DNA from: Mobula birostris
Taxonomy: Eukaryota
Assembly (NCBI RefSeq): GCF_030028105.1
Contig: NC_092383.1
Coordinates: forward strand, 86,695,921-86,759,920
Direction of reading: 5' to 3'
Length of the DNA stretch: 64,000 bases
This document shows positions 5,761-60,651 of the stretch, piece by piece (position 1 is the stretch's first letter; each line of letters begins with the position of its first letter). A model generated the notes under the pieces. It was not told the origin of the DNA. It worked only from the letters and a program-made list of their open reading frames with translations, and ran no database searches. Position numbers and translations under genes: made by a program.

Positions 5761-6591
5761 GGTAGATTCCGACCCTCTGAATCTCCTCCAGCAACTGTAT
5801 ATTTCACTGGCCTGTAGTTCCCTGACTTGTCACTGCTTCCCTTCTTCAATAACAGTTATATTAACACCCTCCAGTCTCCTGGAACTTCACCCATAGCTGA
5901 AGATTTCTTTCTACTGCTTAAACACTAGCCAGCATGGAGAGGTAGTCATGGTACTGACCCACATTGCATGGCATCCAGGGTGACCTAGCTAACTGAAAAG
6001 GTTCAAACATTTTCTCTGTTCATCTCACCACTATCTGACCCAACATCTTTCTGAAGTCCTAGACCTAACCACTGTCCCCCACTTCTCACGGACTAATCAA
6101 TGTTTTCTTATAGCGGTTTTGTAGTGCAGATGTTCTGAAATTCTGGGGGAGATATTCAGGTTCAGAAATCTGTGTGTACATGCAGCTCATTTGAGGGCAG
6201 GTAATCACAAAGATGTTGATGTCTGAATGGTTCAGATCATCAGGCTCTCTGTTGAAAGAGGATGAATGTCAGCTAGCCTATTTCAGAAGACTCTGCATGA
6301 CAAAGTTTTAGTGGGATCCATCTGTGCCATTGAATGGTTGGACCACGTCTGAGTTAAAAGAAAATCTCTGAGACAGCCGCTCCACCTCAGTACTGCACTG
6401 GGAGGACCGCCCAGAGTTTCTACTCGGATCTGTGGAGTGGGAAGTGAACCCACAATGTACTGACACACTGGACTGCAGTTCAGGCCATAATCATTGTGAG
6501 GTCATGGGGTACAACTAGGGTTGTGATGTTGAAATGAGCATTGAAATGTGTTTATATGTGAAATCTGTAAGAATTCCATCCTCAATTTCAG

Positions 6592-6879
6592 GTGCGTTAT
6601 GGGCAGAGAGAGATATAAAAGGAGTTGTGGGAAGAGCGATCACAATCGATTGTCACTATGAAGCAAAGTACCGCTCACACACAAAGTATTGGTGCCGTTG
6701 GCAGAGAGTAGGATGTTTTCCTTTACATGGACGAGAGTCAATCACAGATAACCCAGCACAAGGAATATTTACTGTTACTATGAAGGACCTTGTGTCTGGA
6801 GATACAGCACAGTATGACTGTGGAGTTACAGAATCGGGTACTGATATAGTTTTTACCGTGAATCTACAAGTATATGATG
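6592..6879 (+). CDS. Gene A exon: CD300/pIgR-like Ig V domain (shortened)
   Basis: tttcag|GTGCG acceptor and G|gtatgt donor, phase 1-1, 288 nt. GALWAERDIKGVVGRAITIDCHY...KYWCRWQRVGC...DTAQYDC has the canonical Ig cysteines plus the WC-x6-C pair typical of CD300/pIgR/TREM V domains. Confidence 0.9.
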
Positions 6880-10116: not shown

Positions 10117-10434
10117 AACCGGTATCTGTTCCTGTGCTGTATCTGTCACCGCCAAATATCTCGTGTGTTGGACACTCAGTGTCAGTGTCCTGTGAGTCTC
10201 TCCAGGGATCTCTTCCCATTCAGTACACGTTCTATGAAAAGATCCCATCTGAGGATTCAAAGATCTCCAACACCAGTAAACTGGCTCTACATTGTCAATC
10301 CTTCAAACACCAGCACCATCAATATTACTGCACAGCCTCAAATAATCATGGAGCAAAATCCAGTGAAATGATCAACGTGAGAATCTTCAATAGAATGGGG
10401 AGTTGCAGTTATACGGTGGAAATCAATGGCACTG
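10117..10434 (+). CDS. Gene A exon: C2-type Ig domain
   Basis: cctttcccacag|AACC acceptor and G|gtgagt donor, phase 1-1, 318 nt. EPVSVPVLYLSPP...VSCESLQGSLPIQYTFY...YYCTASN; paralogous to the exons at 35184-35498 and 60652-60972. Confidence 0.9.
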
Positions 10435-14306: not shown

Positions 14307-14358
14307 GACGTAATTATTCTTGTGAAACTATAGGAATACATTCCATTGCTTCCCTGAG
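14307..14358 (+). CDS. Gene A exon: short stalk (GRNYSCETIGIHSIASLR)
   Basis: Acceptor aaattttatttccttgcctcaacag closely matches the gene B stalk acceptor (gaattttatttccttgtctccacag). Shares the YxCE motif; AG|gtaaat donor; phase 1-2 joins the C2 and TM exons in frame. Confidence 0.85.
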
Positions 14359-15808
14359 GTAAATCACTCAATCAGTTTCCAGTGAAAAGCACAATGTTCC
14401 CATTGCCGATGATTTGAGATGTTCCACTTCAGATTGGTGCAGATTGTAGACAGAATTCCTTTTCATATGCTAGCACGAAATGTCTGTGAGGTTATTGACT
14501 TCAATCAAATCGACTCTGGGAGCCAAGAATACCTGGTGCTCCCATGCATGCTTAAAGCTGGAGTTCCAAGGTAAATTTATTTTTGAATAGCACAAGAATA
14601 AAAAGAGATATTTGTTTGCATTGGAACGCAGTTCATTAAGATGAAAATGTCACTGAGGTTATCTCACGCTGCATGCTTAGGCCCCCTTCAGGCCTTTTCC
14701 TATCTTTGCTTGTCTATCTCTCATTCTAACCCTCAGTTCTCTTCTCCCTCAGAATCTATTTTAAGCATCCCTAGAGGTACGACATAAAAAGTGTGCTCAC
14801 ATGTCTCTGTGGGGATGACCTGCGCATTCTCAGAAATCTTCCTAAAGGGATAATTCTTCTGATTTCAATTGGATATGTCAGAGACTAGCTTTTATTGGCA
14901 ATTTCTTGATATGCTCTTTCCATAACAAGAGGTGGTCCCTTGTTATCCATTCTGTTAAAACTTTTAAGGGAAGGTGGTTACAAATGGCCATATCTCAGTG
15001 TACAGGAAGGAGAAAGAGTATCTCGTGATGAGTTGTTATAACAACAACCATTTCCTCACTGTCAGCAAAACAAAGGAGCTTGTGATAGACCTGTGCACGT
15101 GACCCTGTCTTCATCGGCAGTGCTCAGGTTGACAGGGTTGAGAGCTTCAAGATCCTAGGGGTGAACATTACCAATAACATGACTGGTCCGACCATATAGA
15201 AGCTTTGCGCCAATTGGAAAATTATTCTTTATTAACATTATTACATATTCAAATATTAGTGTATCTATTGCATTCTGTTGAACCTAGTCCACACACCAAC
15301 CACTGTAACCCAAGCCATAATGGGTTTAATAAAGTAGCTCGTGGTTATTTTCCCATTTTAAAAATCATTGCCCTTGTTTCTATGCCTTCGCATCTCATCC
15401 TCCTGAATCCTCTGTAGTTGCTCATATCCGTCCATGTAGATTCCATTGTCTCCTTCAGAGCTGTATCCATTTTTCCAATGACGTCATGTTGTTCCCAGCG
15501 CAGTCATTATTTCACCTCGCCAGTTCTCTCTCTGTCTTTTCTAAGTCCATTTCACACTGCAGTGACTAATTCCCAGATCCAATTTATCTGTAGCCATGTA
15601 CCAGTAGCTAGGTCTGTAAATGATGACCCCAGGTTTTCCCTGTCTCCCTCAGTCAACAAGACTTTAGTCTCGTAGCCGAACTCTGTTGTCTCTGTTGCTT
15701 TACCTTGCTTCACTCCACTAGGATTACAGAGCAAAACTGGGGGTGAGTGTATCAAACACAAAGCCAGCTCGTTTCTCCCCACTCCTGTATCTCTTCTCCT
15801 TTGCTCAG

Positions 15809-15881
15809 ATACACAGTATGGAAGCTGGGGCGCTGGCTGCTCTTTATTCTGATGGTTATCTTCACTATTTCAATCAAATAG
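15809..15881 (+). CDS. Gene A exon: transmembrane segment with basic residues, ending in TAG (YTVWKLGRWLLFILMVIFTISIK*)
   Basis: Polypyrimidine tract plus ctcag acceptor; phase-2 start as in the gene B TM exon; hydrophobic run; TAG at 15879-15881; AAG|gtaggt donor 18 nt further on. Confidence 0.8.
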
Positions 15882-17154
15882 TTCAAGCAAGAAACTAAGG
15901 TAGGTTTGATGGACATCTGAAGATTGTGCCCAAATAGTTTCCATGAATGCTTTCAAATATACAGGTCACTGAAAGGCCAAAAATACTGTCTGTATGGAGT
16001 ACTTTACATCCTCTGACCAAACCAAACCTCTGTTCAAAGTCCAAGATTCAAGGTAAATTTCATTATCAAAGTACATATATGACACCCTGAGATTCATTTT
16101 CTTGTCATAATCAACAAGTCTATGGAAGAGTAACTATAAGAAGATTAATGAAAGATCAACCAGAGTGCAGAAGACAACAAACTGTGCAAATGCAAGAATA
16201 AATAAATGGCAATAAATAATGAGAACATGAATTCAAGAGTCCTTGAAAATGAGTCCGTTGGTTGTGGGAACATTTCAGTGGTGGGGCAAGTGAATCTGGT
16301 AGTGTGCTTGAACCTGGTGGTGTGAGTCCTGAGGTTCTATGCAGCTGCTTTCAGTAAGTTTTGACACATTGTGTGCAGAAGGGACTGGAGAGCTTGACAT
16401 CAAATCAAATCCAGTTTAATTATCATTTAAACCATGCATAGGCACAGCTGAACGAGACAGTGTTAATCTGGGGCTAAGGTGCAAAACGTTCAAAATAGCA
16501 AGCAAACTTGAAAATAGCGAGTAACATAATTCAATGTGAATATGGAGTCCTTGTGTCAGTGTGAGACAGAATTCTGTTGTGAGCAGCCATTTGGAATAAA
16601 CCAGATTCCCATTTTCAAAGTATTTGATGACTTCATCATTGTCTTCTGCAGAAATGCGATGACTGAAATTTGCACTGCTTATACCTTTGTGAAGAATCCT
16701 TGAAGCTGACAAATGTGATGGAATTCTGCTTCAAGATCAGATGTTTTCTCCTAGCTTTGAACAGCTCGTATTGACTGTTCTGTGTATATGCCTTACGTCA
16801 CTATACCAGTGACTTAATGAAACTGGAACCAAGCAAAACAAACTAATCATCCTTCAAAGTGACATTTTTGTTTCCATAATTCTATTTTTAAAACTTTCCC
16901 TTCTTTGTACTGAACATAGTTTGACCTTTCCCAATGCTTGAGAATCTTCAACTCTGTTAGATAGAGAGTTGTCAATTCAAATTTTAGCCGTAGATATTGC
17001 TTATTATACTAATCTGCAAATAATAATGAATTAAATGCTTCTTAATTCATTGCTGGTGTTAATGAGTGGTTATATGTTTTTTTCTCATCTGACTTAAGTC
17101 ATGGAGAACAGATTGCATTTTGGTTCCTGGATTTGTCTCAGTGTCAATGGTTAT

Positions 17155-17450
17155 TTACTTACTGCCCGTTATGCCGGTGCTTAGAGCATCAATGAAGGTC
17201 CTCCATCTCCGTCTGTCCTAGGCCACCTTCTCTATTGTATCTCAGATTTGGTTCAAGGGTCCTCATTTTTGCCTCTATGGTATGGTGCCAAGTAGTATTT
17301 GGCCTCCCGCATTTCCTCAGCCCTTCAGGTGTCCTCTGAAGTGCTGTCTTGGAGAATGGAATTGACCACTCTTCTCACTATGTGCCCAAATCATCTGCAA
17401 CATTTACTCATGATGACTGAGGCCACGTCCTCTTGATAACACTGATGGAG
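17155..17450 (-). mobile_element. RTE-clade LINE 3' fragment
   Basis: Minus strand gives WLGHIVRR...G(RRK)RGRP.TTW-like remnants and a taagtaa tail. Confidence 0.55.
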
Positions 17451-18454
17451 TATGGGAAACAATTAATCCTTCAGGCCATGAGATTACACGAGAACAATTA
17501 TTGAAGATGGATATGGACCTGAAGCATTGGATTTGTTTTTCTTTACGCGGATGCTGCCTGACCCACTAAAGAATTTTCATCATCGGCTATTTTTGTTTTG
17601 GATATTCAGCATTTTTGCTTCTCTGTTAGAAAGATGAATAAATGGCAATGCTGCAATGATACAATCAACTCAAGCTCAGTTCTCGTCACTATGTAAAAGC
17701 CTTAAAGGCTAATGAACAATGGTAAGAAAAGACGGGTGCTGGATTAAATGAGTGAGTTGCAGCATGAAATGGTGGGTGGTGAAGCGTGTGAAAATGCTTG
17801 TAGTTGGTGTTACTTTATTCACTGCTGTTGTGTGATAGAAACCCATGAACATACAATAACACTTGGAACTACTGTGTGAAGAAGTTGTTTGCAAATGGGA
17901 CAAAGTGAACTACATAGACAGTACAGGAGTCTCTGCTATTTGGTGCTGCAGGAGTGGGATGTGGAATTTTACACTCACTCTCAACACTGTTATTATCACA
18001 ATACTATTCACTGCTTGGATGAGTGCAGCTCCACAAAAACACTCACAAAGTCCGATGTCTTCCTGGGTAAATTACCGAGGGTGTTCACCTGGAATTCTCT
18101 AACAGCATCTCCAAGTTGAAGGTCTACAGCAGTGACTAATGGCAATGTCCTGAGTAACATGCCACTTGACAGTGGAAATATTTAGCAGTTTGTTCATTAT
18201 TGCTCGCTGTGAATCTTGGATATTATTCATGAAGTAATAATGTGGCTGATCTTAAGGGCTGCCTGGCTTGAACCTTAACCAACAATAACATATGAAAAGA
18301 GGAGGAGAAATGGGACAGCAGACACTTCAGATTTCAAAGTCAATGTCAAAGTTGAATTTACTGTCATATGCACGATTACATGTATGTGCAGATGCAATGC
18401 AAATCTTACTTGCAGGGGCACCATAAGCAAATAACATCAGAGTAGGTAGATAAA

Positions 18455-19275
18455 TCACCTGGACCAGATAGTCTACACTCCAGGGTTCTGAAAGGGGTGG
18501 CTGAAGAGATTGTGGAGGCTTTAGTAATGATCTTTCAAGAGTCAATAGACTCTGGCATGGTTCCGGAGGACTGGAAAATTGCAAATGTCAAGAAGGGAGG
18601 GAGGCAGAAGAAAGGAAATTATAGACCAGTTAGTCTGAGCTCAATAATTGGGAAGATGTTGGAGTCAATTATTAAGGTTGTGGTTTCAAGGCACTTGGAG
18701 GCACATGATAAAACAGGCCATAATAAGCATGGTTTCCTTAAGGGAAAAACTTGTCTCATAATTTTTTTTGGAATTCTTTGAAGAAATAGCAAGCAGGATA
18801 GACAAAGGAGAATTGGTGGCTGTTGTGAACTTGGATTTTCAGAAGGCCTTTGACAAGGAGCCACACATGAGGCTGCTTAACAGATCAAGAGCACATGGTA
18901 TTGCAGGAAAGATCCTAGCATTGATAGAGCATTGGTTGTTTGGTAGGAGGCAAAGAGTGGGAATAAAGGGAGGCTCTTCCAGCTGGCTACTGATGGTGTT
19001 CCACAGTGGTCTGTGTTGGGACCACTTGTTATGTTATATATCAATGATTTGGATAATGGAATTCATGGCTTCGTGGCCAAGTTTGAGGATGATATGGAGA
19101 GAGGTGAATGGGCAGGTAGTTTTGAGGAAGTAGAGAGGCTACAGAAGAGCTTAAATAGATTATGAGAATGGGAAAAGAAGTGGTAGATGGAACTCAGTGT
19201 CGTAAAGTGCACGTTCATGCACGTTGGTCGAAGAAATAAAAGCATGCACTATTTTCTAAATGGAGAGAAACTTCA
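18455..19275 (+). mobile_element. CR1 RT fragment
   Basis: VPEDWKIANV, NYRPVSL, HGFLKGK and LDFQKAFDK motifs. Confidence 0.9.
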
Positions 19276-19467
19276 AAGATCTTTTCCTAGTAATCTTCAG
19301 ACCTGCTACTTCTTCTGGAAAATGAGTCTAAACACCTTTTCTTATCTACAATTGGATAATTTGTTTTTGTATTTTGCATGAGAAAGGAAAGTCTAAATGA
19401 TCAATGACTGCTAATGCAAACTATAATGCTTTATTTCAGGTTTACATAACATTAAATAACAAAACTC

Positions 19468-20103
19468 TTAAGACCATAAGACATAAGACAAAGGAGCAGA
19501 AGTCGGCCTTTCGGCCCATCGAGTCTGCTCCGCCATTTTATCATGAGCTGATCCATTCTCCCATTTAGTCCCACTCCCCCGCCCTCTCACCATAACCTTT
19601 GATGCCCTGGCTACTCAGATACCTATGAATCTCTGCCTTAAATACACCCAATGACCTGGCCTCCACTGCTGCCCGTGGCAACAAATTCCATAGATTCATC
19701 ACCCTATGACTAAAAAAATTTCTTCGCATTTCTGTTCTGAATGGGTGCCCTTCAATCCTTAAGTCATGCCCTCTCGTACTAGACTCCCCCATCATGGGAA
19801 ACAACTTTGCCACATCCACTCTGTCCATGCCTTTCAACATTCGAAATGTTTCTATGAGGTCTCCCCTCATTCTTCTAAACTCTAAGGAATACAGTCCAAG
19901 AGCGGACAAATGTTCCTCATACATTAACCCTCTCATTCCCGGAATCATTCTAGCGAATCTTCTCTGTACCCTCTCCAACGTCAGCACATCCTTTCTTAAA
20001 TAAGTTGACCAAAACTGCCCACCGTACTCCAAGTGAGGTCTCACCAGCGCCTTATAGAGCCTCAACATCACATCCCTGCTCCTATACTCTATTCCTCTTG
20101 ATG
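19468..20103 (-). mobile_element. Young CR1 3' portion
   Basis: 185-aa open segment LYKALVRPHLEY...WNLLP; (tcttatg)n tail. Confidence 0.92.
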
Positions 20104-20904
20104 AATTTAAGCTCCTTTCCATTTAAGCTCAAGTTCAGGTTTATTCTCATTCAACTACATGCATATATATGGCTAAATAAAACATCGTTTTACTGGGGAC
20201 AAAGTGCAAAACACAGTACATATAGTCACACACAGCAGATATAGTTTTGATTCGCCATATACAATCATAAAATAATATTAGTAGAAGTCCCTGAGTAGCA
20301 TGGCCTGAATATTGACAGGTTGACATAAAGTGTGAGGTGCATGCTTATGCAGGACAGTACAATGTCGCTGGCACTATTATAATAAAACAAGCAGATGTAT
20401 AAATATTTGAAGCAGCAGCAATAAAAGGTGAAAAGTGACAAGTGCAGGATGAGAGTGTGTCTGTGAGATGGGGAATGGGGAGGCATTTATGTAATTTGAA
20501 TGCCCACTGTAATCAGCACACTTGAATAAACATCTAGATAATGGGGAACTGCACTGCAAGAGCTGGTGCGTTAGGAAACAGCAATAAATACCACTTCTTC
20601 AAATATGAAAGGAAATTAAACCAGATGATTCCTGTTGTTCTCTCCTGTGTCAAGGCCTAAAGTCAGTGCTGAACCCAACATAGGACTTCAGCCATTGGAA
20701 GCATTTAATAGGTAGTCACAACTTAACCCCATTATCAACCCCGGCTATAACAGCCTTACGGAACCATGTATACAGTATCCATACTTTGATAATAAATATA
20801 CTTTGACTTTGAGTTTGAGTTTCCTAGGGCAATTATTATCTAAGGCGTAAAGAGGATTGTTTCATATTGCTTTAAATGGGGACTTGTTTCCTTATACAAG
20901 TATT

Positions 20905-21520
20905 AGTCCATGAGACCATAAGACATAAATGCAGGATTAGGCCATTCAGCCTATCGAGTCTGCTCTGCCATTCCATCACGGCTGATCCCAGATCTCGCTC
21001 AACCCTATACACCTGCCTTCTCGCCATACCCTCATAATCTAATCTAATATCCTTTGATGCCCTGACCAATCAGGAAATAATCAACTTCTGCCTTAAATAT
21101 ACCCACAGACTTGGCCTCCACTGCAGTCTGTAGCAGGGCATTCCACAGATTTACTACTCTCTGGCTAAAAAACCTCTGTTCTAAAGGGTAACCCATCAGT
21201 TCTGAGGCTGTGCCCTTTAGTTCTGGATGCGTCCACCATAGGAAATAACTTTTCCACATCCACCCTATTTAGTCCTTTCAAGATCATGTGGGTTTCAAAG
21301 AGATTCCCCTGCATTCTTCTAAATTCCAGTAAGTACAAGCTCAAAGCTGCAAAACGCTCCTCATATGTTAACCACTTCATTCCCAGAATCATCCTCATGA
21401 ACCTCCTCTGGACTCTCTCAGTGGCAACACACCCCTTCTGAGATATGGGGGCCAAAACTGTTGACAATACTCCAAGTGCAGCCTGACCAGTGTCTTATAA
21501 AGGCTCAGCATAATCTCCAG
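20905..21520 (-). mobile_element. CR1 3' portion
   Basis: ERVQRRFMRMILGM...QRVVNLWNAL. Confidence 0.88.
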
Positions 21521-23681: not shown

Positions 23682-23963
23682 CTAAGGAGCAATACTGGCA
23701 TAAATTGTCTTAGTAGAGTCCTCTGGCATGCTAGGAGACAGATGTTTTCTGCTGACCTTTGGGGGGTTGTTTATAAATTTAACATCTGTGTAGATGACAT
23801 TACTCTCTCCATTAACAGAGGGATCTGCTGTTGATTTCCTTTGAAATTCCATTGTTGCATCCATGGCCCCATTTTCTTCGTTAGCCATCTGGGCAGGAGC
23901 CTTGTCGCTTTGAATCTCCAGCACTGTCGCATAAGCATTTTGCTCTACAGATGTTGTTGTTTC
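23682..23963 (-). CDS. Gene B terminal exon: cytoplasmic tail with ITIM/ITSM motifs
   Basis: ttcattctttag|GAA acceptor, phase 0. ETTTSVEQNAYATV...VIYTDV...TIYASIAP*. Confidence 0.88.
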   Translation of the reverse strand, partial: ETTTSVEQNAYATVLEIQSDKAPAQMANEENGAMDATMEFQRKSTADPSVNGESNVIYTDVKFINNPPKVSRKHLSPSMPEDSTKTIYASIAP

Positions 23964-27375: not shown

Positions 27376-27467
27376 CCTTGAGTTTAGAGTTTAGGCACCA
27401 AATTAGGCAAATGAGAAAAACCATGGCAAGAACTCCAGTGACACTGAGCACGACTATGGGAATGAGT
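27376..27467 (-). CDS. Gene B exon: uncharged transmembrane segment (LIPIVVLSVTGVLAMVFLICLIWCLNSKLK)
   Basis: tgtttgtaccacag acceptor and G|gtgag donor, 92 nt, phase 2-1; about 23 hydrophobic residues. Confidence 0.88.
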
Positions 27468-28414
27468 CTGTGGTACAAACAACAAGAAGGCATCAGCCTT
27501 GGTTCACATTGATTCTTGGCTAATAGTAAGCAATGAGCATCTGGCATTTACTCAACTTATTATACGTTATATGTGTTTCTAGTTTCTGATTGCTCCTTTT
27601 TATTGCTATTGTGTTCGCTTTTGATTGGGGCAGACTGTCTCTACAGTCTGCAGTCAACGACACATTGCTAAATTGAACTGAAGTGAACTAAACTGTTTCA
27701 ATGACTCTGTAATTTATTCTGTGTTTTTCACTCATTTTTTTTGCCATCTGCATATTTGTTCTTTTCTTTTTGTGCGTTGGGTGTTGGATATTTTCTTTGA
27801 ACAGGTTCCATTGTGTTTTTCTGTTTCGGGGCCGCCTGTGGGAAGACAAATCTCAGGGTTGTATACTGCACACATACTATGATAATCAATATACCTGCAA
27901 TCTTTGAACTCCACTCATGACCTCAGGATGTGTGCAGCCCAGTAAGTGAGGTGTTGGATATTGTTGCAGTGTAGAAATGCAGCAGCAAATATATGCCTAG
28001 CAAGATCCCATAAGCAACCATGTGATAATGACCAATGATAATGATAGAGATAAGTATTGTGCAGGCCATAAGGAAGCGGCAATTTGCTCCTCACTGAATA
28101 TTACACGGGGACTGCACCATCCACCTGAAAGCACTGATTGAGTCATTTTAATCCAACAGATGACACTAATAACCATGCAACCCTCCTTAGCCCTTCTCAC
28201 CAAGATATTGACCCAACAATTTGCAGTCGGACCTAAACACTACATTTAGAAGCCAACCCCAACCTCAGTGGTGAAGTCTGCTCTTGCAAGGCCAGCAAAG
28301 TGTCAGTCCCCTTAAGGGGAGGGGTGGAGGAGGCAGAGCAAACAAGGCCCAGGAAACTGATGTAAAATCCTTTACTGTTAGACAAACTCCTCCCACCCAC
28401 ATGACTTTCTGTCC

Positions 28415-37963: not shown

Positions 37964-38659
37964 AATCACCCCTGGCAGTGCATCACAGGCACCCATCACT
38001 CTAGGTGTAAAAATACTTGTCTCATTCATCTACTTTGAACTTGCCACACCTCACCTTAAAGCGTGCCCCCTACGATTCAACCCTGAGACAAAGATACTGT
38101 CTATCTACTCTGTCTATGCCTCTTGTTGTCTGATAAAGTTCAAAGTTCAAAGTCGAATTTATTATCCAAGTATATACATGTCATTCAGCCTCCAGCACTC
38201 CACAGAATACAAGCTAAGTTTGTCCAGCTCCTGTTTATAGCCCATGCCCTCTAATCCAGGCAACATCTTGGTAAATCTCTTTCCAAAGCTTCCACATTCT
38301 TCCTATAAGAGGGTAAACAGAACTAACACAAGACTGCAGATATGGTCCAACTAGTTCTATAAAGCTGCAACATAACATCCTGTCTCTTTAACGCAGTGCC
38401 TCAATCAATAATAGCAAGCACTACCACGCCCTCAACCTGAGCAGCTACTTTCGAGGAGCTTTAGACTTGCACGCGGAGATCCCTCTGTCAATCAGCATTG
38501 TTAATGCTCCTGCCATTACCTATGTACTGACCATTTACATTTGATCTTTCAAAGTGCAACACCTCACATATGGCTGGACTAAAGTCCAATTTGGGCAGAC
38601 TAAACTTCATGGATCAAATTTATTAGTGGGGACATAACATCAGTTACTGACAAACTTAC

Positions 38660-38980
38660 CAACAAGTACATGCAGATGTACATTTAATAACAGACCGAGA
38701 CCTGGTGTTGTAATTCCACAGCTGTACCATCCTGTATCTCCAGAGTGAAGATCCTCCATAGTAACAGTAAATATTCTCCGTTCCGGGTTATCTGTGATTG
38801 ACAATCGTCCACGCCGTCTGTGTTGCCCATTTGTTTCCACTAAAACTGAACATTGGCGAGTCCATCCATGGCACCAATACTTTGTGTGTGAGCGGTACTT
38901 TGCCTCATAGTAACAATCGATTGTAATCGCTCTTCCCACAACTCCTCTTACATATTCATCTGCCCACAATGCACCTGAAA
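38660..38980 (-). CDS. Gene B exon: second CD300/pIgR-like V domain (V2)
   Basis: cctcag|TTTCAG|GTGCA tandem acceptors (alternative start 38974) and G|gtaagt donor. VSGALWADEYVRGVVGRAITIDCYY...WCHGWTRQC...DTGWYSC. Confidence 0.88.
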
Positions 38981-39072
38981 CTGAGGGAGGTATTTTCAGA
39001 TTTGATGGAAAGGAAGAATTTAATGCAAATAAATAACATTGAAAGCACAAGGTTAACCACTAAGAAACCTAC

Positions 39073-39393
39073 TATCAATTACTTGTAGATGAACATAAAA
39101 TCTCGGATTGGGACTTCTTTCTGTAATTCCACAGCTGTACCACCCTGTATCTCGAGAGTGAAGATTCTCCATAGTAACAGTAAATATTCCCTGTTCCGGG
39201 TTATCTGTGATTGACACTCGTCCACTCCGTCCACATTGCCCATTTGTTTCCACTAAAACTGAACATTGGCGAGTCCATCCATGACACCAATACTTTGTGT
39301 GTGAGCGGTACTTTGCTTCATAGTGACAATCAATTGTGATCGCTCTTCCCACAACTCCTGTTACATATTCATCTGCCCACAATGCACCTGAAA
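39073..39393 (-). CDS. Gene B exon: first CD300/pIgR-like V domain (V1)
   Basis: ccttag|TTTCAG|GTGCA tandem acceptors (alternative start 39387) and A|gtaggt donor; open frame with the same cysteine pattern. Confidence 0.88.
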
Positions 39394-42300
39394 CTAAGGA
39401 GGAAGTACTTCAGAAAATTAAGGTGTAAAATCAATTTAGCCAACAAGGCATCTGAAATTGAACAGAAGAATATTCAGATTCCGTGGGAAAGGAATTGCTT
39501 CATATGCTGATGTACATTTTGCAAATAATTACTGCCTGCCCATTATTGATTTAAAAGGAATTCCGTCAGATTTATGATTAAAGATGATTGTAAAAAATCA
39601 TCAGATATTAATCATTAGCTTCTTGCACTGGTTGTGTTCCTGCTCCTCACCTTCCTCATTGTCTCAATCGTCACCCTCCCTGCCATCCACCCGGATCCAT
39701 CTACCTTTTGTTTTCATCTGGGTGCTTCCAGCTATCACCCACCCAGCTCTATCTCCAAACATCACCGCTCCCCTAACCCTATAAGGGTTCCATCTGCCTG
39801 TTATCCTACAGCCCTCTTCGGTCCACTAATGAGCTACTGGCTCCTGTTTCGCCACTCCCCCTCTCCTTTTGATACAGACTATCTTTCCTCTCCACCCTCA
39901 GTCCTAAGATAGGGAATCAAGCCAAAACATCGACAATATCTTTCTCACCCATCTCCCCCCACCCACAGATGCAGCTTGACTCACTGAGTTCCTCCAGCGT
40001 CTGCAGTTGTGTCTCAATAAGAATATCCCTCTTGATCATGTCCTGAGGAGGTGTCTCATGACTTCACAGCCAATGACTTTGGTCTGAAGTACTGCCGGTG
40101 CTGTTGCTATGTCAGTGTTCCCTCCAGTACATTGTGGGGTCACTCCTGCTTCACCATGGGTAACTTCGCTCACCTCAACACTGAACTGATTCCACAATCT
40201 ACTGACTCACTTTCAAGGACTCTACATCTCATTTTCTGAATGTTATTTATCTACCTATCATCTTTTGTAGCCTGGGGAAAAATACACACGCAGGACCACA
40301 AATATTTTTAGGGGTCATTAAGTCCTTTATCTGTTTTAGGTATTTTAATACAGAAAGAGGGTATCAAAATAACATCACAATACACATTAATGAAAAACAC
40401 AGTTCCTGCTGTGACAATCTCAGCTTAATTTCGGTTCATACCCTTGTTTTGTCTACAGTATGAAAATAAATAAAATAAAATATACAGACCAATATGGTAG
40501 TGGCAATTCTATAAAACCATACAAACAATATTAGACTCCCGCCAACCCTGTACCTTATACACAACATCAAAAATATGAATAAATACATCTCATGTTAATT
40601 AAGGGATATACTCACTTTGGCACACACGTGCTTAACTTCCAAACACATATAGGCAAGTTATAGACAAGTTATCCTCGCTCATGCTACGTGAACAGAGATT
40701 AACACATTCACATTACTAGGTTATGTTCACATTTGCTCATGAAACAATAAAGTAAGCCAAAAAAAGACTTTTACAATATAATGCCTTGTAGATAAATTAC
40801 CAGAAAGACTAACCTACTAGGCCAATAAGGAACTTTATGCAACCACACTATCCAACGCTGACATCTTACTCACAGAAATATGAAGCATCCACATGCAAAA
40901 CATGTCAAATTACCGATATTCTAGATTTACAAACAAGTATAAACAAATTTACATGGATATTATCAAATATTATTCATCGTATGACTAGCCTTCAACATTC
41001 TTTCTAGAACCTTCAACTCTTCTTTCTACTCCACACATGCATAATGACATCACTGTTTTCTTTTAAAGGCACAGACAGCTATTTTAGCATTACCAGGGTG
41101 AATACGTAAATGCACTTTAACAATAAATAATGATATTCGATGGTCAGCTGGTTACATTTCTATTTATTTTTGTATTTGCACATTGGTTATTTGTCAGTCT
41201 CTTGTTAGTGTGTAGTTTTACATTGATTCTATTATACTTTTTCTGCTGTGAATGCCCACAAGAAAATTGATTTTTCAGTTGACAACTGGGTGTGAAGATC
41301 AATGGACTCCCTTGATACTCACAGAACCATCGACCATCCATTCTCACCTCACTTGCTCCTTAAATTGTTAACAAGCTGGGTTCTGAATGGTGAGAGTTTG
41401 AAAACTGAGAGAAACTGGTATTGCATGAGGTCTGTAGACTATTTTTGGACTTGTTGTGGTGTTGGTGAAATAGAATAAATGGAGAATATGTCTATAAAGA
41501 TGTATAAAGATGGCTTCCTCCACCTGTACTTGAAAGCTCGATTTCAGCATATAAGAGAAGTTTGGTTAGGGACATGGATAGTAGGGGGATGGAGGGCTAT
41601 GGCATTGGTACCGGTTGATGGAAATGAGCAGTTTAAATGGGTTGGTATGGACTAGATAGGTTAAGGGGCCTGTTTCTGTACTGTACTTTTCTGTGACTCT
41701 ATCACTCTAGATCTGACTATCTATCCTATCTCTGCCTCTCATAATTTTCTAAACTTTCATCAGTCTCTGTCTCCAATCCAACTTTGAACAACTTCTCCTT
41801 ATAGCACATAATCTCTAATCCAGACAGAATCATGTTAAACCCCTTCTGTTCTCTTTCCAAAGCTTCCACATCCTTCATATGATGGGGTCACAACGCTACA
41901 CACATTAATCCATGTGTGGCCTAACTAAAGTTTTATAAGGCTGCAATATGACTTTCTAACTTTCTACTGAATGACTTGCTGATGAAGGCTATATGCCTTC
42001 TGTACCACCTCGTTTAATTGTATGGGAGCTATGAATTCATTATCATCATCATTATGTGCCATATTGTATGATGTAGACAATCATAGTCTCATGGCCATGA
42101 CTGTTTTGGCAAATTTTTCTACAGGAGTGGTTTGTCATTGCCTTCTTCTGGGCAGTGTCTTTACAAGACAGAAGACCTCAGCCATTATCAATACCCTTCA
42201 GAGATTGTCTGTCTGGCGTCAGTGGTCGCATAACCTGGACTTATGACATACACCAGCTGCTCATATGACCATCCACCACCTGCTCCCATGGCATCATGTT

Positions 42301-44729: not shown

Positions 44730-44766
44730 CCGGCAGGAAGCAAATGAGAAGAATTAGAATCCACAT
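44730..44766 (-). CDS. Gene B leader exon (MWILILLICFLP)
   Basis: aaaataATG; hydrophobic signal peptide; G|gtgagt phase-1 donor; paralog at 52911. Confidence 0.88.
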
Positions 44767-59600: not shown

Positions 59601-59879
59601 ATGGTCTGGGTTGATTGAAAGTTAGCATCCACTGCACTGCCACACTCCTTACCAGAACGTTAGCTGGGAGTTCCACTTGGGTCTCTGGAGTAGAAAGTGA
59701 CCCTAGAATGTACTGCAGCCAGCATAGTCACAGCACTGACAGCACCAAAATCATTAACTGTGAGGTCATCAGACATATCCTAGGACATGACCTGCAGTCC
59801 TTTTTGAAATTACTTTCTAAGTATATTTGTTTGTATTAAATAGCTTCTTTTACCTCACATCTGAGACTATCCCCTTCAG

Positions 59880-60200
59880 TTTCAGGTGCATTTTGGGCAG
59901 AGAAATATATAAGAGGAGTTGTGGGAAGAACAGTCACAATCGATTGTCACTATGAAGCAATGTACCTCTTTCACACAAAATTTTGGTGCATTGGATTCAA
60001 CCACCCATGTTCAACCGTAGTGGAAACACATGGGCACCCAGAACGGAGTGAAAGAGTGTCAATCACAGATAACCGGATACTAGGAGTGTTTACTGTTACT
60101 ATGGAGGATCTTCACCCTGGAGATACAGGATGGTACAGTTGTGGAATTACAACATCTGGCAACAATCCACTGTTTGGAGTATATCTACTGGTATCTGACG
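59880..60200 (+). CDS. Gene C exon: CD300/pIgR-like V domain
   Basis: ttcag|TTTCAG|GTGCA tandem acceptors (alternative start 59886) and G|gtcagt donor. GAFWAEKYIRGVVGRTVTIDCHY...FWCIGFNHPC...DTGWYSC. Confidence 0.88.
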
Positions 60201-60651
60201 GTCAGTTTGTTAGTGATTGCCCTTGTGTCTTCATTAAATAAATGTTTGATCCGTGTTTCCTCTGGAAAGAGTCAGAACAAACGATGACTGGGGAAGATAA
60301 TGCACAGGTGTCCCTGCCAATTGGGGAGATGTTGCTCTCATGGCTGAGGGTCATCATCATATTAATAAAGACAATCTTCTCCTCCTCCTCCTCCTCTTCC
60401 TCCTATTTCTGCTCCTCCTCCTCGCCAACACAAGAGTACAAGATCTTTTTTCAGTCCTTGTCCATCCCTTGCTGCCTCCATGTTAATATCAGTGCCAAGT
60501 GTTTTCCTTCCTGCTACAGGTCTCCAAACACAGTCATAATTACATTTGCTGTACAAGAGCCATCAACATATTCAAGACATCTGAGAAATTGATGCTTTTT
60601 TAAGTTTTCAGATGCTCATCCAGTGTCTAAATATTTGATTCTTTCCCACAG

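What the first reader, a model, noticed from the sequence alone, without database searches (positions are those of the whole stretch)
15809..15899. Gene A TM carries YTVxxLxR, the spacing of the FcR-gamma-coupling motif, with a stop just before an intact donor
Seen: RYTVWKLGRWLLFILMVIFTISIK*, TAG at 15879-15881, then six more sense codons (FKQETK) and AAG|gtaggt. Established: LILRA/PIR-A (YTVENLIR) and GPVI (YTKGNLVR) use an arginine at this position to bind FcR-gamma. A stop under about 50 nt upstream of the last junction usually escapes NMD. Inference: gene A is an adaptor-coupled activating receptor, and the stop is either a fixed tail truncation or a recent nonsense allele. This exon is absent from the supplied ORF track.
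Basis: partly seen in the sequence, partly recalled or inferred. Interest (0 to 1): 0.72.

Follow-up and report, generated by a model that had tools for sequence, protein, structure and literature searches.

The report
Tail-less arginine-anchor receptor gene in manta
This is the real membrane-anchor exon of one gene in a large manta-ray family of paired on/off immune receptors; an old stop codon, shared with a second devil-ray species, removes its short inner tail, a small twist on a known kind of gene.

Summary
Observation confirmed. Window 15809-15899 (+) is a 91-nt phase-1 exon with a good acceptor and an AAG|gtaggt donor. It reads YTVWKLGRWLLFILMVIFTISIK-TAG-FKQETK.

The window is giant manta ray (Mobula birostris) chromosome DNA, inside a 1.9-Mb cluster of CD300/pIgR-like (skate "MDIR"-like) V+C2 receptor genes.
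- The cluster holds 31 homologous arginine-type TM exons. R-W is invariant across manta, skate and sharks.
- Proteins with this TM have short tails without motifs. ITIM-tailed genes use a different, uncharged TM exon.

So gene A belongs to the activating-type class. An FcR-gamma gene with the membrane Asp lies on the same chromosome.

The stop:
- TAG is a derived TGG>TAG change.
- It is not a recent allele. The M. hypostoma ortholog (XP_062921371) ends at the same residue.
- An RNA contig from that species carries the TAG and splices 15899 to 16652, the family's last junction, 18 nt after the stop.
- The no-longer-translated tail codons have decayed.

Y and R are family features. T, V and L are private to gene A, which has Lys where the NxxR motif has Asn.

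Whether the 257-aa tail-less product still works with an adaptor, is GPI-anchored, or is decaying remains open. Apart from a repeat listing of this same stretch (s1-145571), the scan had not noted it before.

The parts
6586..6879 (+). V-set (CMRF35/CD300-like) Ig exon of gene A. The canonical acceptor AG has become AA at 6584-6585, and an in-frame AG lies at 6590-6591. There is a 9-codon deletion in the C'-C'' region relative to paralogs.
   Evidence: tblastn to family proteins. Pfam V-set E=1e-7. Acceptor compared with genes B and C. The ORF is assembled and open.
10117..10434 (+). C2-type Ig exon of gene A
   Evidence: 94% identical to M. hypostoma XP_062921371 (P0012). At least 74 homologous exons in the cluster. 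Splice sites seen.
14307..14358 (+). Stalk/linker exon (G-RNYSCETIGIHSIASL-R). It carries a 39-nt in-frame deletion at 14330 relative to two other species.
   Evidence: Sequence. P0012 has the extra TTAESMTTAGSTG. The runs of organisms A and C both hold the extra 38-39 nt at 14330.
15809..15899 (+). Arginine-type transmembrane exon, 91 nt, phase 1: the finding itself
   Evidence: Aligned with 14 paralogous exons. Profile search finds 31 such exons. Present in a spliced RNA contig of the sister species.
15831..15833 (+). Conserved membrane Arg codon (CGC)
   Evidence: R8 and W9 are invariant in alignment A1: manta, Rhinoraja, Scyliorhinus and Hemiscyllium. Arg is present in 13 of 14 paralogous exons.
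15879..15881 (+). Derived stop codon TAG. Paralogs have TGG (Trp), or TCG in two copies.
   Evidence: Alignment. P0012 ends at the same residue. The RNA contig X1 record 2 has only one difference in 15807-15899, at 15846.
15900..16651 (+). Last intron (gt...ag). It contains a very high-copy repeat at about 16022-16453.
   Evidence: RNA contig X1 record 2 joins 15899 to the sequence that starts at 16652 (tables 5c and 8). Acceptor read.
16652..17049 (+). Terminal exon. It is the homolog of the paralogs' last coding exon. Here the relic tail codons read KCDD then TGA (16664-16666), and the rest is 3' UTR. ATTAAA lies at 17030. Further RNA contigs reach 17587.
   Evidence: homology and decay. (RNA contigs 16684-17049, 17016-17516, 17246-17587). 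(poly(A) signals).

Best explanation
Shown:
- The exon is the TM exon of 'gene A'. Its structure is leader (368 nt before the window), V, C2, linker, TM exon, then terminal exon.
- Gene A is a member of the arginine-TM, short-tail (activating-type) class of a giant-manta CD300/pIgR-like ('MDIR-like') paired-receptor cluster.
- A G>A change turned the Trp codon near the inner end of the TM helix into TAG.
- This happened before M. birostris and M. hypostoma split.
- In M. hypostoma the gene is still transcribed, and the TM exon still splices through the 15900 donor to the family's terminal exon. The stop therefore lies 18 nt before the last junction.
- The ORF from ATG to TAG is open for 257 codons.

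Inferred:
- The mRNA should escape nonsense-mediated decay.
- It encodes a V-C2 receptor that ends ...GRWLLFILMVIFTISIK. That is Arg, 14 hydrophobic residues and one Lys, with no cytoplasmic tail.
- My preferred mechanism, at about 0.4, is that this is still a working receptor. The Arg would pair with the membrane Asp of a disulfide-linked ITAM adaptor, most likely the FcR-gamma ortholog on the same chromosome. In that adaptor's TM exon, Asp is followed by 15 hydrophobic residues and then Arg, so the depths match.
- A tail is dispensable in such receptors. The intact paralogs carry only about 20 tail residues without motifs.
For: - Sequence and splice sites.
- Homology to 14 and then 31 Arg-TM exons, all on C18 at 85.90-87.78 Mb. 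R-W invariant across five species.
- Class split. All 14 Arg-TM segments found in 13 family proteins are followed by no ITIM or ITAM. Eleven are followed by tails of 3 to 48 residues; the other two are internal segments of long gene models. P0012 alone ends inside the hydrophobic segment. Uncharged-TM proteins have long ITIM tails.
- In the genome, uncharged TM exons lie 3.5-5.4 kb upstream of an ITIM exon in 4 of 4 cases. No Arg-TM exon has a same-strand ITIM exon within 30 kb.
- TAG derived from TGG.
- Shared with M. hypostoma: P0012 = XP_062921371/2 ends ...FTISIK. RNA contig X1 record 2 covers 15807-15899 with one mismatch at 15846, then joins to 16652 and onward and runs to 17049. The join is absent from the same species' DNA run.
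- ORF open for 257 aa.
- The only indel that certainly post-dates the stop is the 39-nt deletion at 14330, and it is in frame.
- FcR-gamma ortholog: TM exon [30 protein letters not shown] plus the two ITAM halves.
- Published link between an Arg at the N-terminal end of the TM (NxxR motif, with a DYT motif before it) and FcR-gamma association: PMC2413239, PMC6557307, PMC4536121.
Against: - No binding evidence. The fold test gave no verdict.
- Gene A lacks the Asn of NxxR.
- Signs of relaxed constraint:
  - Gene A's TM exon is the second most divergent of the 30 full-length exon matches (39.5 bits against 54-72), and it is less conserved than its own intron flanks (70% against 73%). Intact paralogs show the reverse, 81% against 78%.
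  - There are about 7 amino-acid changes in 148 codons against M. hypostoma, with intron divergence of 2.3%. That gives an omega of about 0.9.
  - The V exon has lost its canonical acceptor and 9 codons.
- The M. hypostoma RefSeq model lacks the leader and the V domain and starts from an exon tens of kb upstream.
- No RNA run of M. birostris itself held words of the exon.
- Only 14 hydrophobic residues follow the Arg, against 17 in every intact relative.
Confidence: 0.42

Rival explanations
1. Transcribed but decaying gene. The TAG, or another lesion, ended useful function before the two Mobula species split. What remains is a relic that is still spliced at a low level, and the open frame is there because too little time has passed.
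For: - Omega of about 0.9 against M. hypostoma.
- TM exon more diverged than its flanks, unlike intact paralogs, with the lowest profile score among the exons with intact splice sites.
- Canonical V acceptor AG>AA and a 9-codon V deletion.
- The M. hypostoma model lacks leader and V.
- RNA contigs are at low depth, and one retains the intron after 14358.
- With about 1.2% change per lineage, I expect only about one disrupting mutation in 771 nt. An intact ORF is therefore weak evidence (own estimate).
- No M. birostris protein for this gene turned up in the length-matched search.
Against: - All five coding exons and their splice sites give an open 257-codon frame.
- All three structural changes keep the frame: the 39-nt deletion, the 27-nt deletion, and the 6-nt acceptor shift.
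- The gene is still transcribed and correctly spliced at the last intron in the sister species.
- The stop removes only a tail that carries no known motif.
Confidence: 0.3
2. Conversion to a lipid (GPI) anchor. By ending the protein inside the hydrophobic segment, the stop turned the TM exon into a C-terminal GPI-attachment signal. Primate and pig CEACAM genes did this through stops in their TM exons, and I recall that human CD16b (FcγRIIIB) is a similar case. The Arg would then lie in the cleaved spacer, and no adaptor would be needed.
For: - The product ends with 14 hydrophobic residues plus Lys and has no cytoplasmic tail.
- A candidate cleavage site with small residues (S-I-A) lies 11 residues before the hydrophobic run (a rule-of-thumb scan only).
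- Precedent for independent stops in TM exons creating GPI signals: PMC2832619.
- Faster change of the TM exon after truncation fits a switch to 'any hydrophobic tail will do'.
Against: - The tail is very hydrophobic (mean Kyte-Doolittle 2.8, above the 2.1 of intact paralog TMs). That favours stable membrane insertion over transamidase processing.
- The spacer carries three positive charges.
- No dedicated GPI predictor was available.
- Arg-Trp and most of the helix are still conserved with the ortholog, with only Ile/Val differing.
Confidence: 0.15
3. The Arg is not an adaptor-docking residue. It would be a juxtamembrane feature of this family's anchor, for example snorkelling to the outer head-groups. 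In that case the 'activating' reading of the whole class is wrong.
For: - The Arg lies at the outer edge of the hydrophobic run, 17 residues from the inner boundary in intact copies.
- Asn at R-3 is absent from most copies.
- No adaptor binding has been shown for any elasmobranch member.
Against: - ITIM-tailed genes of the same cluster use a separate TM exon with no charge, the classic paired-receptor split.
- R-W is invariant from sharks to rays.
- An FcR-gamma with the matching Asp is conserved.
- In tetrapods an Arg in this position is needed for FcR-gamma association (PMC6557307, PMC2413239).
Confidence: 0.1
4. Recent nonsense allele private to the sequenced animal, or an assembly error.
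For: None found.
Against: - The same stop position appears in the M. hypostoma RefSeq protein.
- The same codon appears in an RNA contig of that species.
- The downstream tail codons have decayed to 52% identity against 62.5% in the flanks, and they carry a second stop shared by both species.
Confidence: 0.02

Closest known systems
Skate modular domain immune-type receptors (MDIR; Cannon et al. 2006, Immunogenetics 58:362; cited in PMC3031540)
   Same: An elasmobranch multigene family of activating and inhibitory Ig receptors whose V domains resemble CD300, pIgR and TREM. From memory of the abstract, MDIR1 has a positively charged TM residue and MDIR2/3 have ITIMs. Skate (Rhinoraja, Amblyraja) proteins are among the closest hits here.
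   Different: I could not read the paper, so identity of the TM type is not checked. Gene A is a Mobula-lineage copy whose TM is cut short by a stop. I know of no description of that for MDIRs.
NxxR-type TM of FcR-gamma-associated receptors (LILRA2, PIR-A, GPVI, OSCAR, Fc-alpha-R, NKp46; Xenopus XFL 'TM1')
   Same: An Arg at the N-terminal end of the TM, a Tyr 7 residues before it (compare the published DYT motif), a short tail without motifs, and pairing with inhibitory genes that use an uncharged TM (PMC2413239, PMC6557307). Some manta and skate paralogs have the exact N-x-x-R (NMGR, NVGR).
   Different: - Gene A has K-L-G-R, with no Asn.
- The residue after Arg is an invariant Trp.
- The C-end lacks the acidic residues described for the LRC type.
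- The ectodomain is a CD300-like V plus a C2 domain, not LRC/KIR-like.
- Homology of the TM exons was not demonstrable: there was no significant sequence match.
Mammalian CD300/CMRF35 (CLM/LMIR) family
   Same: V domain of the same type, with the ...ITIxCxY...KYWC... signature. NCBI names several relatives 'CMRF35-like molecule 8' or 'polymeric immunoglobulin receptor-like'. Both families are paired activating/inhibitory families.
   Different: From general knowledge, activating CD300 members use a mid-membrane Lys (with DAP12) or Glu (with FcR-gamma), not an N-terminal Arg. They also lack the second C2 domain.
Stop-in-TM-exon conversions: primate and pig GPI-linked CEACAMs; human CD16b versus CD16a
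   Same: A point mutation creates a stop inside the TM exon of a paired Ig receptor, leaving a C-terminal hydrophobic stub without a tail (PMC2832619). The CD16b case is from memory.
   Different: In those cases GPI anchoring is proven, and extra changes lowered the hydrophobicity or created the cleavage site. Here nothing beyond the stop is shown.
Tail-less antigen-receptor chains (membrane IgM 'KVK', TCR-alpha), from general knowledge
   Same: A ligand-binding chain with 1-3 cytoplasmic residues that depends fully on ITAM partners docked through membrane charges.
   Different: Those are ancient, constrained designs. Gene A's state is a lineage-specific truncation of a chain that normally has about 20 tail residues.

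Membership tests
Elasmobranch CD300/pIgR-like (MDIR-like) cluster, Arg-TM class | CMRF35-type V-set domain followed by the family's C2 domain | tested here: met
   Pfam V-set E=1e-7, and Ig_2/Ig_3/Ig_C17orf99 just under their cut-offs for C2. 57% (V) and 70% (C2) identity to M. hypostoma family protein P0008. At least 74 C2 exons in the cluster.
Elasmobranch CD300/pIgR-like (MDIR-like) cluster, Arg-TM class | 91-nt phase-1 TM exon with invariant Arg-Trp, homologous to paralogs including intron flanks | tested here: met
   Gene A scores 39.5 bits, E=2.9e-6.
Elasmobranch CD300/pIgR-like (MDIR-like) cluster, Arg-TM class | 17 hydrophobic residues after Arg, then T-R-E-T-K and about 15 more tail residues from a terminal exon | tested here: not met
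   A stop follows 14 hydrophobic residues plus Lys. The terminal-exon tail codons have decayed and carry TGA. All other Arg-TM family proteins examined keep the full hydrophobic run after the Arg.
Elasmobranch CD300/pIgR-like (MDIR-like) cluster, Arg-TM class | No ITIM exon downstream | tested here: met
   The nearest same-strand ITIM exon is 105 kb away, with other genes between.
NxxR-type FcR-gamma-coupled TM | Arg at the N-terminal end of the TM | tested here: met
   Arg codon at 15831-15833. Definition from PMC2413239.
NxxR-type FcR-gamma-coupled TM | Asn three residues before the Arg | tested here: not met
   Gene A has K-L-G-R. N-M-G-R or N-V-G-R occurs only in the L011/L012, P0004 and P0051 copies.
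NxxR-type FcR-gamma-coupled TM | DYT-like motif before the TM and acidic residue(s) at its C-end (PMC6557307) | tested here: inconclusive
   R-Y-T is present in gene A, but the family consensus is S-Y/F-M. The C-end is missing in gene A and is basic/acidic T-R-E-T-K in paralogs.
NxxR-type FcR-gamma-coupled TM | Physical, Arg-dependent association with FcR-gamma | not testable with these tools
   Complex prediction with 2 x the FcR-gamma TM exon plus P0012:120-169 scored 0.02, which is no verdict. It needs co-IP or surface rescue.
NxxR-type FcR-gamma-coupled TM | Partner present: an FcR-gamma gene with a TM Asp and an ITAM in the same genome | tested here: met
   PF11628 hit of 56.6 bits at C18:98440460. 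The exon reads ...[23 protein letters not shown]. The ITAM halves DVYEEL and DTYESLQQKAPRKM-stop lie downstream.
GPI-anchored protein | C-terminal hydrophobic run with no cytoplasmic tail, small-residue cleavage site about 9-12 residues upstream | tested here: inconclusive
   The run is 14 residues plus Lys. The only candidate site is S-I-A, with an 11-residue, three-plus-charge spacer. No real predictor was available.
Pseudogene | Frame-breaking lesions upstream of the normal stop region, or loss of transcription or splicing | tested here: inconclusive
   The ORF is open for 257 codons and the sister species has spliced RNA. Against that, omega is about 0.9, the V acceptor is lost, and the TM exon is less conserved than its flanks.

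The most novel reading that the evidence does not exclude
The TGG>TAG change was not a loss but a switch of anchoring mode. It would have converted an adaptor-dependent, Arg-TM receptor into a GPI-linked (or adaptor-only, tail-less) decoy or capture receptor. That form would then have been kept for millions of years in devil rays. It would be an independent elasmobranch replay of the CEACAM and CD16b route from TM to lipid anchor.
Probability: 0.15. Interest if true: 0.55.

Novelty: new member of a known kind. Interest (0 to 1): 0.33.

Why it matters
For this gene the value is modest. It shows how one copy in a fast-turnover immune receptor family lost its tail through a single old point mutation yet stayed transcribed. 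It gives a clean case for testing whether such a receptor needs any tail at all.

The family-level picture is more useful:
- A 1.9-Mb manta cluster holds about 31 Arg-type and a separate set of uncharged/ITIM-type anchors.
- The Arg-Trp motif is unchanged from sharks to rays.
- An FcR-gamma gene with the matching Asp lies on the same chromosome.

The papers read here trace the 'Arg at the outer end of the membrane helix plus FcR-gamma' design only as far back as birds and amphibians. If the pairing were confirmed at the bench, it would put that design at the base of jawed vertebrates, joined to CD300-like rather than LRC-like ectodomains.

Tried and rejected
- Complex prediction (2 x FcR-gamma TM exon plus the ortholog's stalk and TM): score 0.02, no verdict. 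Not evidence either way.
- TM-exon profile against PDB sequences: no match at E<=10.
- ESM Atlas search with a paralog's stalk-TM-tail: only generic single-helix look-alikes. Uninformative.
- The look-up of encoding contigs for the M. hypostoma ortholog: first busy, then no DNA served. A proper dN/dS could not be computed, and the state of the V exon in that species is unknown.
- Cannon 2006 (PMC3701310) and Cannon 2010 (PMC2823954) are not held. MDIR details are from memory and from PMC3031540.
- A literal search for the human motif strings found nothing. Only the published NxxR and DYT motif descriptions were.
- RNA of M. birostris itself: the three candidate runs held none of the 15 sampled words of the exon. 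Expression in the window's own species is therefore unshown. Reads were laid on the sister species' runs.
- Organism C (run X4) covers the exon, but its single-run differences were cut from the table. Its codon at 15879-15881 is unknown.
- I first read the conserved block after the TM exon as a mini-exon with a lost donor. Searches showed it is the family's terminal coding exon (GTA-AAG-TGA = Val-Lys-stop), so I withdrew that reading.
- The minus strand of the stretch holds only a chance 54-codon ORF.
Full report
**What is there.**
- A pyrimidine-rich acceptor (...ctcttctcctttgctcag) ends at 15808.
- A 91-nt exon follows. Its frame from 15810 reads YTVWKLGRWLLFILMVIFTISIK, then TAG (15879-15881), then FKQETK.
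- The donor AAG|gtaggt lies at 15899/15900.
- The upstream exon 14307-14358 ends in AG. This supplies the Arg codon AG|A before YTV and keeps an open frame (G)RNYSCETIGIHSIASL.

**Where we are.** The window is G000:C18:86695921-86759920 of a 4.0-Gb genome. The contig length, 99,800,974, equals that of the contig carrying XP_072133758.1 of Mobula birostris, so this is the giant manta ray. An earlier scan note on a neighbouring gene (s1-145476) used the name 'MDIR-like'. That led me to the skate MDIR literature.

The window holds three genes with a CMRF35/CD300-type V domain (...GRAITIDCHYEAKYRSHTKYWC...) and a C2 domain (Pfam). Across C18 at 85.90-87.78 Mb there are:
- at least 74 C2 exons;
- 12 ITIM-type tail exons;
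- 31 exons homologous to the one under study, found with a profile.

**Gene A model.**

| Part | Window coordinates |
|---|---|
| Leader MWILILLVCSSA | 368 nt before the window start |
| V exon | 6586-6879 |
| C2 exon | 10117-10434 |
| Linker exon | 14307-14358 |
| TM exon | 15809-15899 |
| Terminal exon | from 16652 |

Joined, the frame is open from ATG to the TAG for 257 codons. It is 255 codons if the in-frame AG at 6590-6591 replaces the canonical V acceptor, which has mutated from AG to AA.

**The exon belongs to an arginine-anchor class.**
- Aligned with 14 paralogous exons, including their intron flanks, the consensus is Y/F-M-I-W-x-V-G-R-W-L-L-F-x-L-L-x-I-C-T-I-S-V-x-W-F-T-R-E-T-K.
- With shark and skate proteins added, Arg-Trp is invariant.
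- Among the family proteins retrieved, I found 14 Arg-TM segments in 13 proteins. In all but P0012, 17 hydrophobic residues follow the Arg. Eleven of these are then followed by tails of 3-48 residues without ITIM or ITAM. The other two are internal segments of long gene models.
- Proteins with long ITIM tails (P0018, P0021, P0031, P0040, P0156, P0161) have an uncharged anchor.
- Gene B in this window shows the inhibitory layout. Its uncharged TM exon (...LIPIVVLSVTGVLAMVFLICLIWC...) lies at about 27377-27469 on the minus strand. An ITIM exon (VIYTDV, TIYASI) lies 3.6 kb downstream at 23685-23924.
- The three other exons of gene B's TM type each have an ITIM exon 3.5-5.4 kb downstream. No Arg-type exon has a same-strand ITIM exon within 30 kb.

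This is the standard paired-receptor split, and gene A is on the 'activating-type' side.

**How good is the 'YTVxxLxR' match?** Papers by Guselnikov, Taranin and colleagues define a conserved TM subtype with an NxxR motif at its N-terminal end and a DYT motif before it. This subtype promotes association with FcR-gamma in LILRA2, PIR-A, NKp46, GPVI, OSCAR, Fc-alpha-R and Xenopus XFLs. The Arg is essential (PMC2413239, PMC6557307, PMC4536121).
- The manta family shares the Arg at that end, and an aromatic residue (Tyr or Phe; Tyr in gene A) seven residues before it.
- A few copies have the literal N-x-x-R (NMGR in L011/L012 and P0004, NVGR in P0051).
- Gene A itself has K-L-G-R.
- Its T, V and L are private substitutions on the family consensus, shared only with its M. 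hypostoma ortholog.

Gene A fails the Asn criterion. I could not show sequence homology between this TM exon and tetrapod NxxR exons. The claim is 'works like', not 'is a member'.

**A partner exists.** A PF11628 search of the genome gave two strong hits.
- One is on C7 and is CD3-zeta-like ([27 protein letters not shown]).
- One is on C18 at 98.44 Mb and is FcR-gamma-like ([30 protein letters not shown]). ITAM halves DVYEEL and DTYESLQQKAPRKM-stop lie downstream.

In that adaptor, the Asp is followed by 15 hydrophobic residues before the inner Arg. In gene A, the Arg is followed by 14 hydrophobic residues before the terminal Lys. The shortened helix could therefore still span from the charge level to the inner face (inference). 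A fold test of the two TM segments gave no verdict.

**Origin and age of the stop.** Twelve of the 14 paralogous exons have TGG where gene A has TAG, and two have TCG. The change is therefore a derived G>A. Three lines show it is not a recent allele.
1. The best database match to gene A's C2 domain is P0012 = XP_062921371.1/XP_062921372.1 of Mobula hypostoma. It is 94% identical over C2 and reads ...GIHSIASLRYTVWKLGRWLLFVLMVIFTISIK. It ends at exactly the same residue.
2. Organism A in the read tools carries that protein's diagnostic differences. These are the 39 extra nucleotides at 14330 encoding TTAESMTTAGSTG, and A>G at 15846 (Ile>Val). Its RNA-type contig X1 record 2 covers 15807-15899 with that single difference, so it contains TAG.
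3. The tail codons that the stop silenced have decayed. Gene A's terminal exon reads KCDD-TGA where paralogs read K/R-x-D-E-S-D-P...V-K-stop. It is 52% identical to paralogs against 62.5% in its flanks, whereas other paralog pairs show 78% against 76%. The sister species' RNA has the same TGA (table 5c).

Intron divergence between the two species is 87 differences in 3,712 nt, or 2.3%. This suggests a split of the order of ten million years, which is an inference. Whether a third, more distant species (run X4) has the stop could not be read from the output.

**Splicing and NMD.** The same 525-nt contig runs from 15899 straight into AAATGCGATAACTGA..., which is 16652 onward with three mismatches, and then continues colinear with 16684-17049. 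The joint is absent from the DNA run of that species.
- The 15900 donor is therefore used, and the intron is 15900-16651.
- The acceptor is the one that the paralogs use for their last coding exon.
- The contig ends 19 nt after an ATTAAA at 17030. Other contigs reach 17587, ahead of an AATAAA at 17637.

This is the last junction, and the stop lies 18 nt before it. That is inside the roughly 50-nt zone in which a stop does not normally trigger NMD (established rule). The contig's first 28 nt lie elsewhere, and its match begins 2 nt early, on an AG shared with the end of exon 14358. Together with P0012, this supports the 14358-15809 join. Another contig retains the intron after 14358.

**Is the truncated gene still useful?**

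In favour:
- The 257-codon frame is open.
- All splice sites are usable.
- The last intron is spliced.
- All three structural changes keep the frame. These are a 39-nt deletion specific to M. birostris and therefore later than the stop, a 27-nt V deletion, and a 6-nt acceptor shift.

Against:
- About 7 amino-acid changes in 148 codons against 2.3% intron divergence gives an omega near 0.9, with a wide error.
- The TM exon is the second most divergent of the 30 full-length matches, and it is less conserved than its flanks.
- The M. hypostoma model has neither leader nor V and starts tens of kb upstream.
- No M. birostris RNA run showed the exon.
- No M. birostris protein for it was returned.

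With so little elapsed divergence, an intact frame is only weak evidence. My odds are:

| Reading | Odds |
|---|---|
| Tail-less, adaptor-dependent receptor | about 0.4 |
| Decaying relic | about 0.3 |
| GPI-anchored form, by analogy with stops in CEACAM TM exons (PMC2832619) | about 0.15 |
| Remainder, including 'the Arg is not an adaptor site' | about 0.15 |

**Verdict.** It overstates the specific motif match. The 'recent allele' option is excluded.

The thing is a lineage-specific, tail-less member of a known kind of elasmobranch paired receptor family.

Noticed in passing
G000:C18 86.24-86.66 Mb (loci L002-L005 and rows): Identical Arg-TM exons recur every 103-110 kb (86288273, 86391608, 86501122, 86607279). 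A second exon type recurs at the same spacing (86238169 through 86661464), and C2 exons repeat with it. This suggests a roughly 105-kb segment present in 4-5 tandem copies. It is either a very recent segmental duplication or an assembly artefact.
   Followed up: no
window 23685-23924 (-) and 27377-27469 (-): Gene B's ITIM tail exon (VIYTDV, TIYASI) and its uncharged TM exon. Together with the leader at 44766 (-) and two tandem V exons at 38643-39409 (-), they form an inhibitory counterpart tail-to-tail with gene A.
   Followed up: partly
window 6584-6591: Gene A's V exon has AA where genes B and C have the acceptor AG. An in-frame AG lies 6 nt downstream and could replace it. Which one is used is unknown.
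   Followed up: partly
window 14330: M. birostris lacks 39 nt (13 codons, TTAESMTTAGSTG) of the stalk exon that both other sampled species carry. This is a species-specific in-frame deletion.
   Followed up: yes
L024, about 4,355 nt before the window start (+): A fragment resembling the flanks and 3' end of an Arg-type TM exon (...GAAACTAAGGT...) with its middle missing. It is probably the remnant of a lost gene just upstream of gene A's leader.
   Followed up: no
G000:C18:86770568-86770657 (+), 10.6 kb after the window end: An intact Arg-type TM exon that probably belongs to gene C (V at window 59840-60238, C2 at 60639 onward). Gene C would then also be activating-type.
   Followed up: no
G000:C18:86975640-86975726 (+): The only other Arg-type TM exon with an internal stop (TGA) among the 31.
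   Followed up: no
G000:C18:98440451-98449200 (L027, L031, L032) and G000:C7:39292028-39292111: An FcR-gamma-like gene (TM exon plus two ITAM halves) lies on the same chromosome as the receptor cluster, 11.7 Mb away. A CD3-zeta-like TM exon lies on C7.
   Followed up: partly
window 16022-16453, 15014-15301, 17174-17317: Very high-copy interspersed repeats. Summed contig depth reaches about 3x10^5 in DNA runs of two other species. They sit inside gene A's introns and 3' UTR. CR1-like LINE fragments lie at 18446-21500.
   Followed up: no
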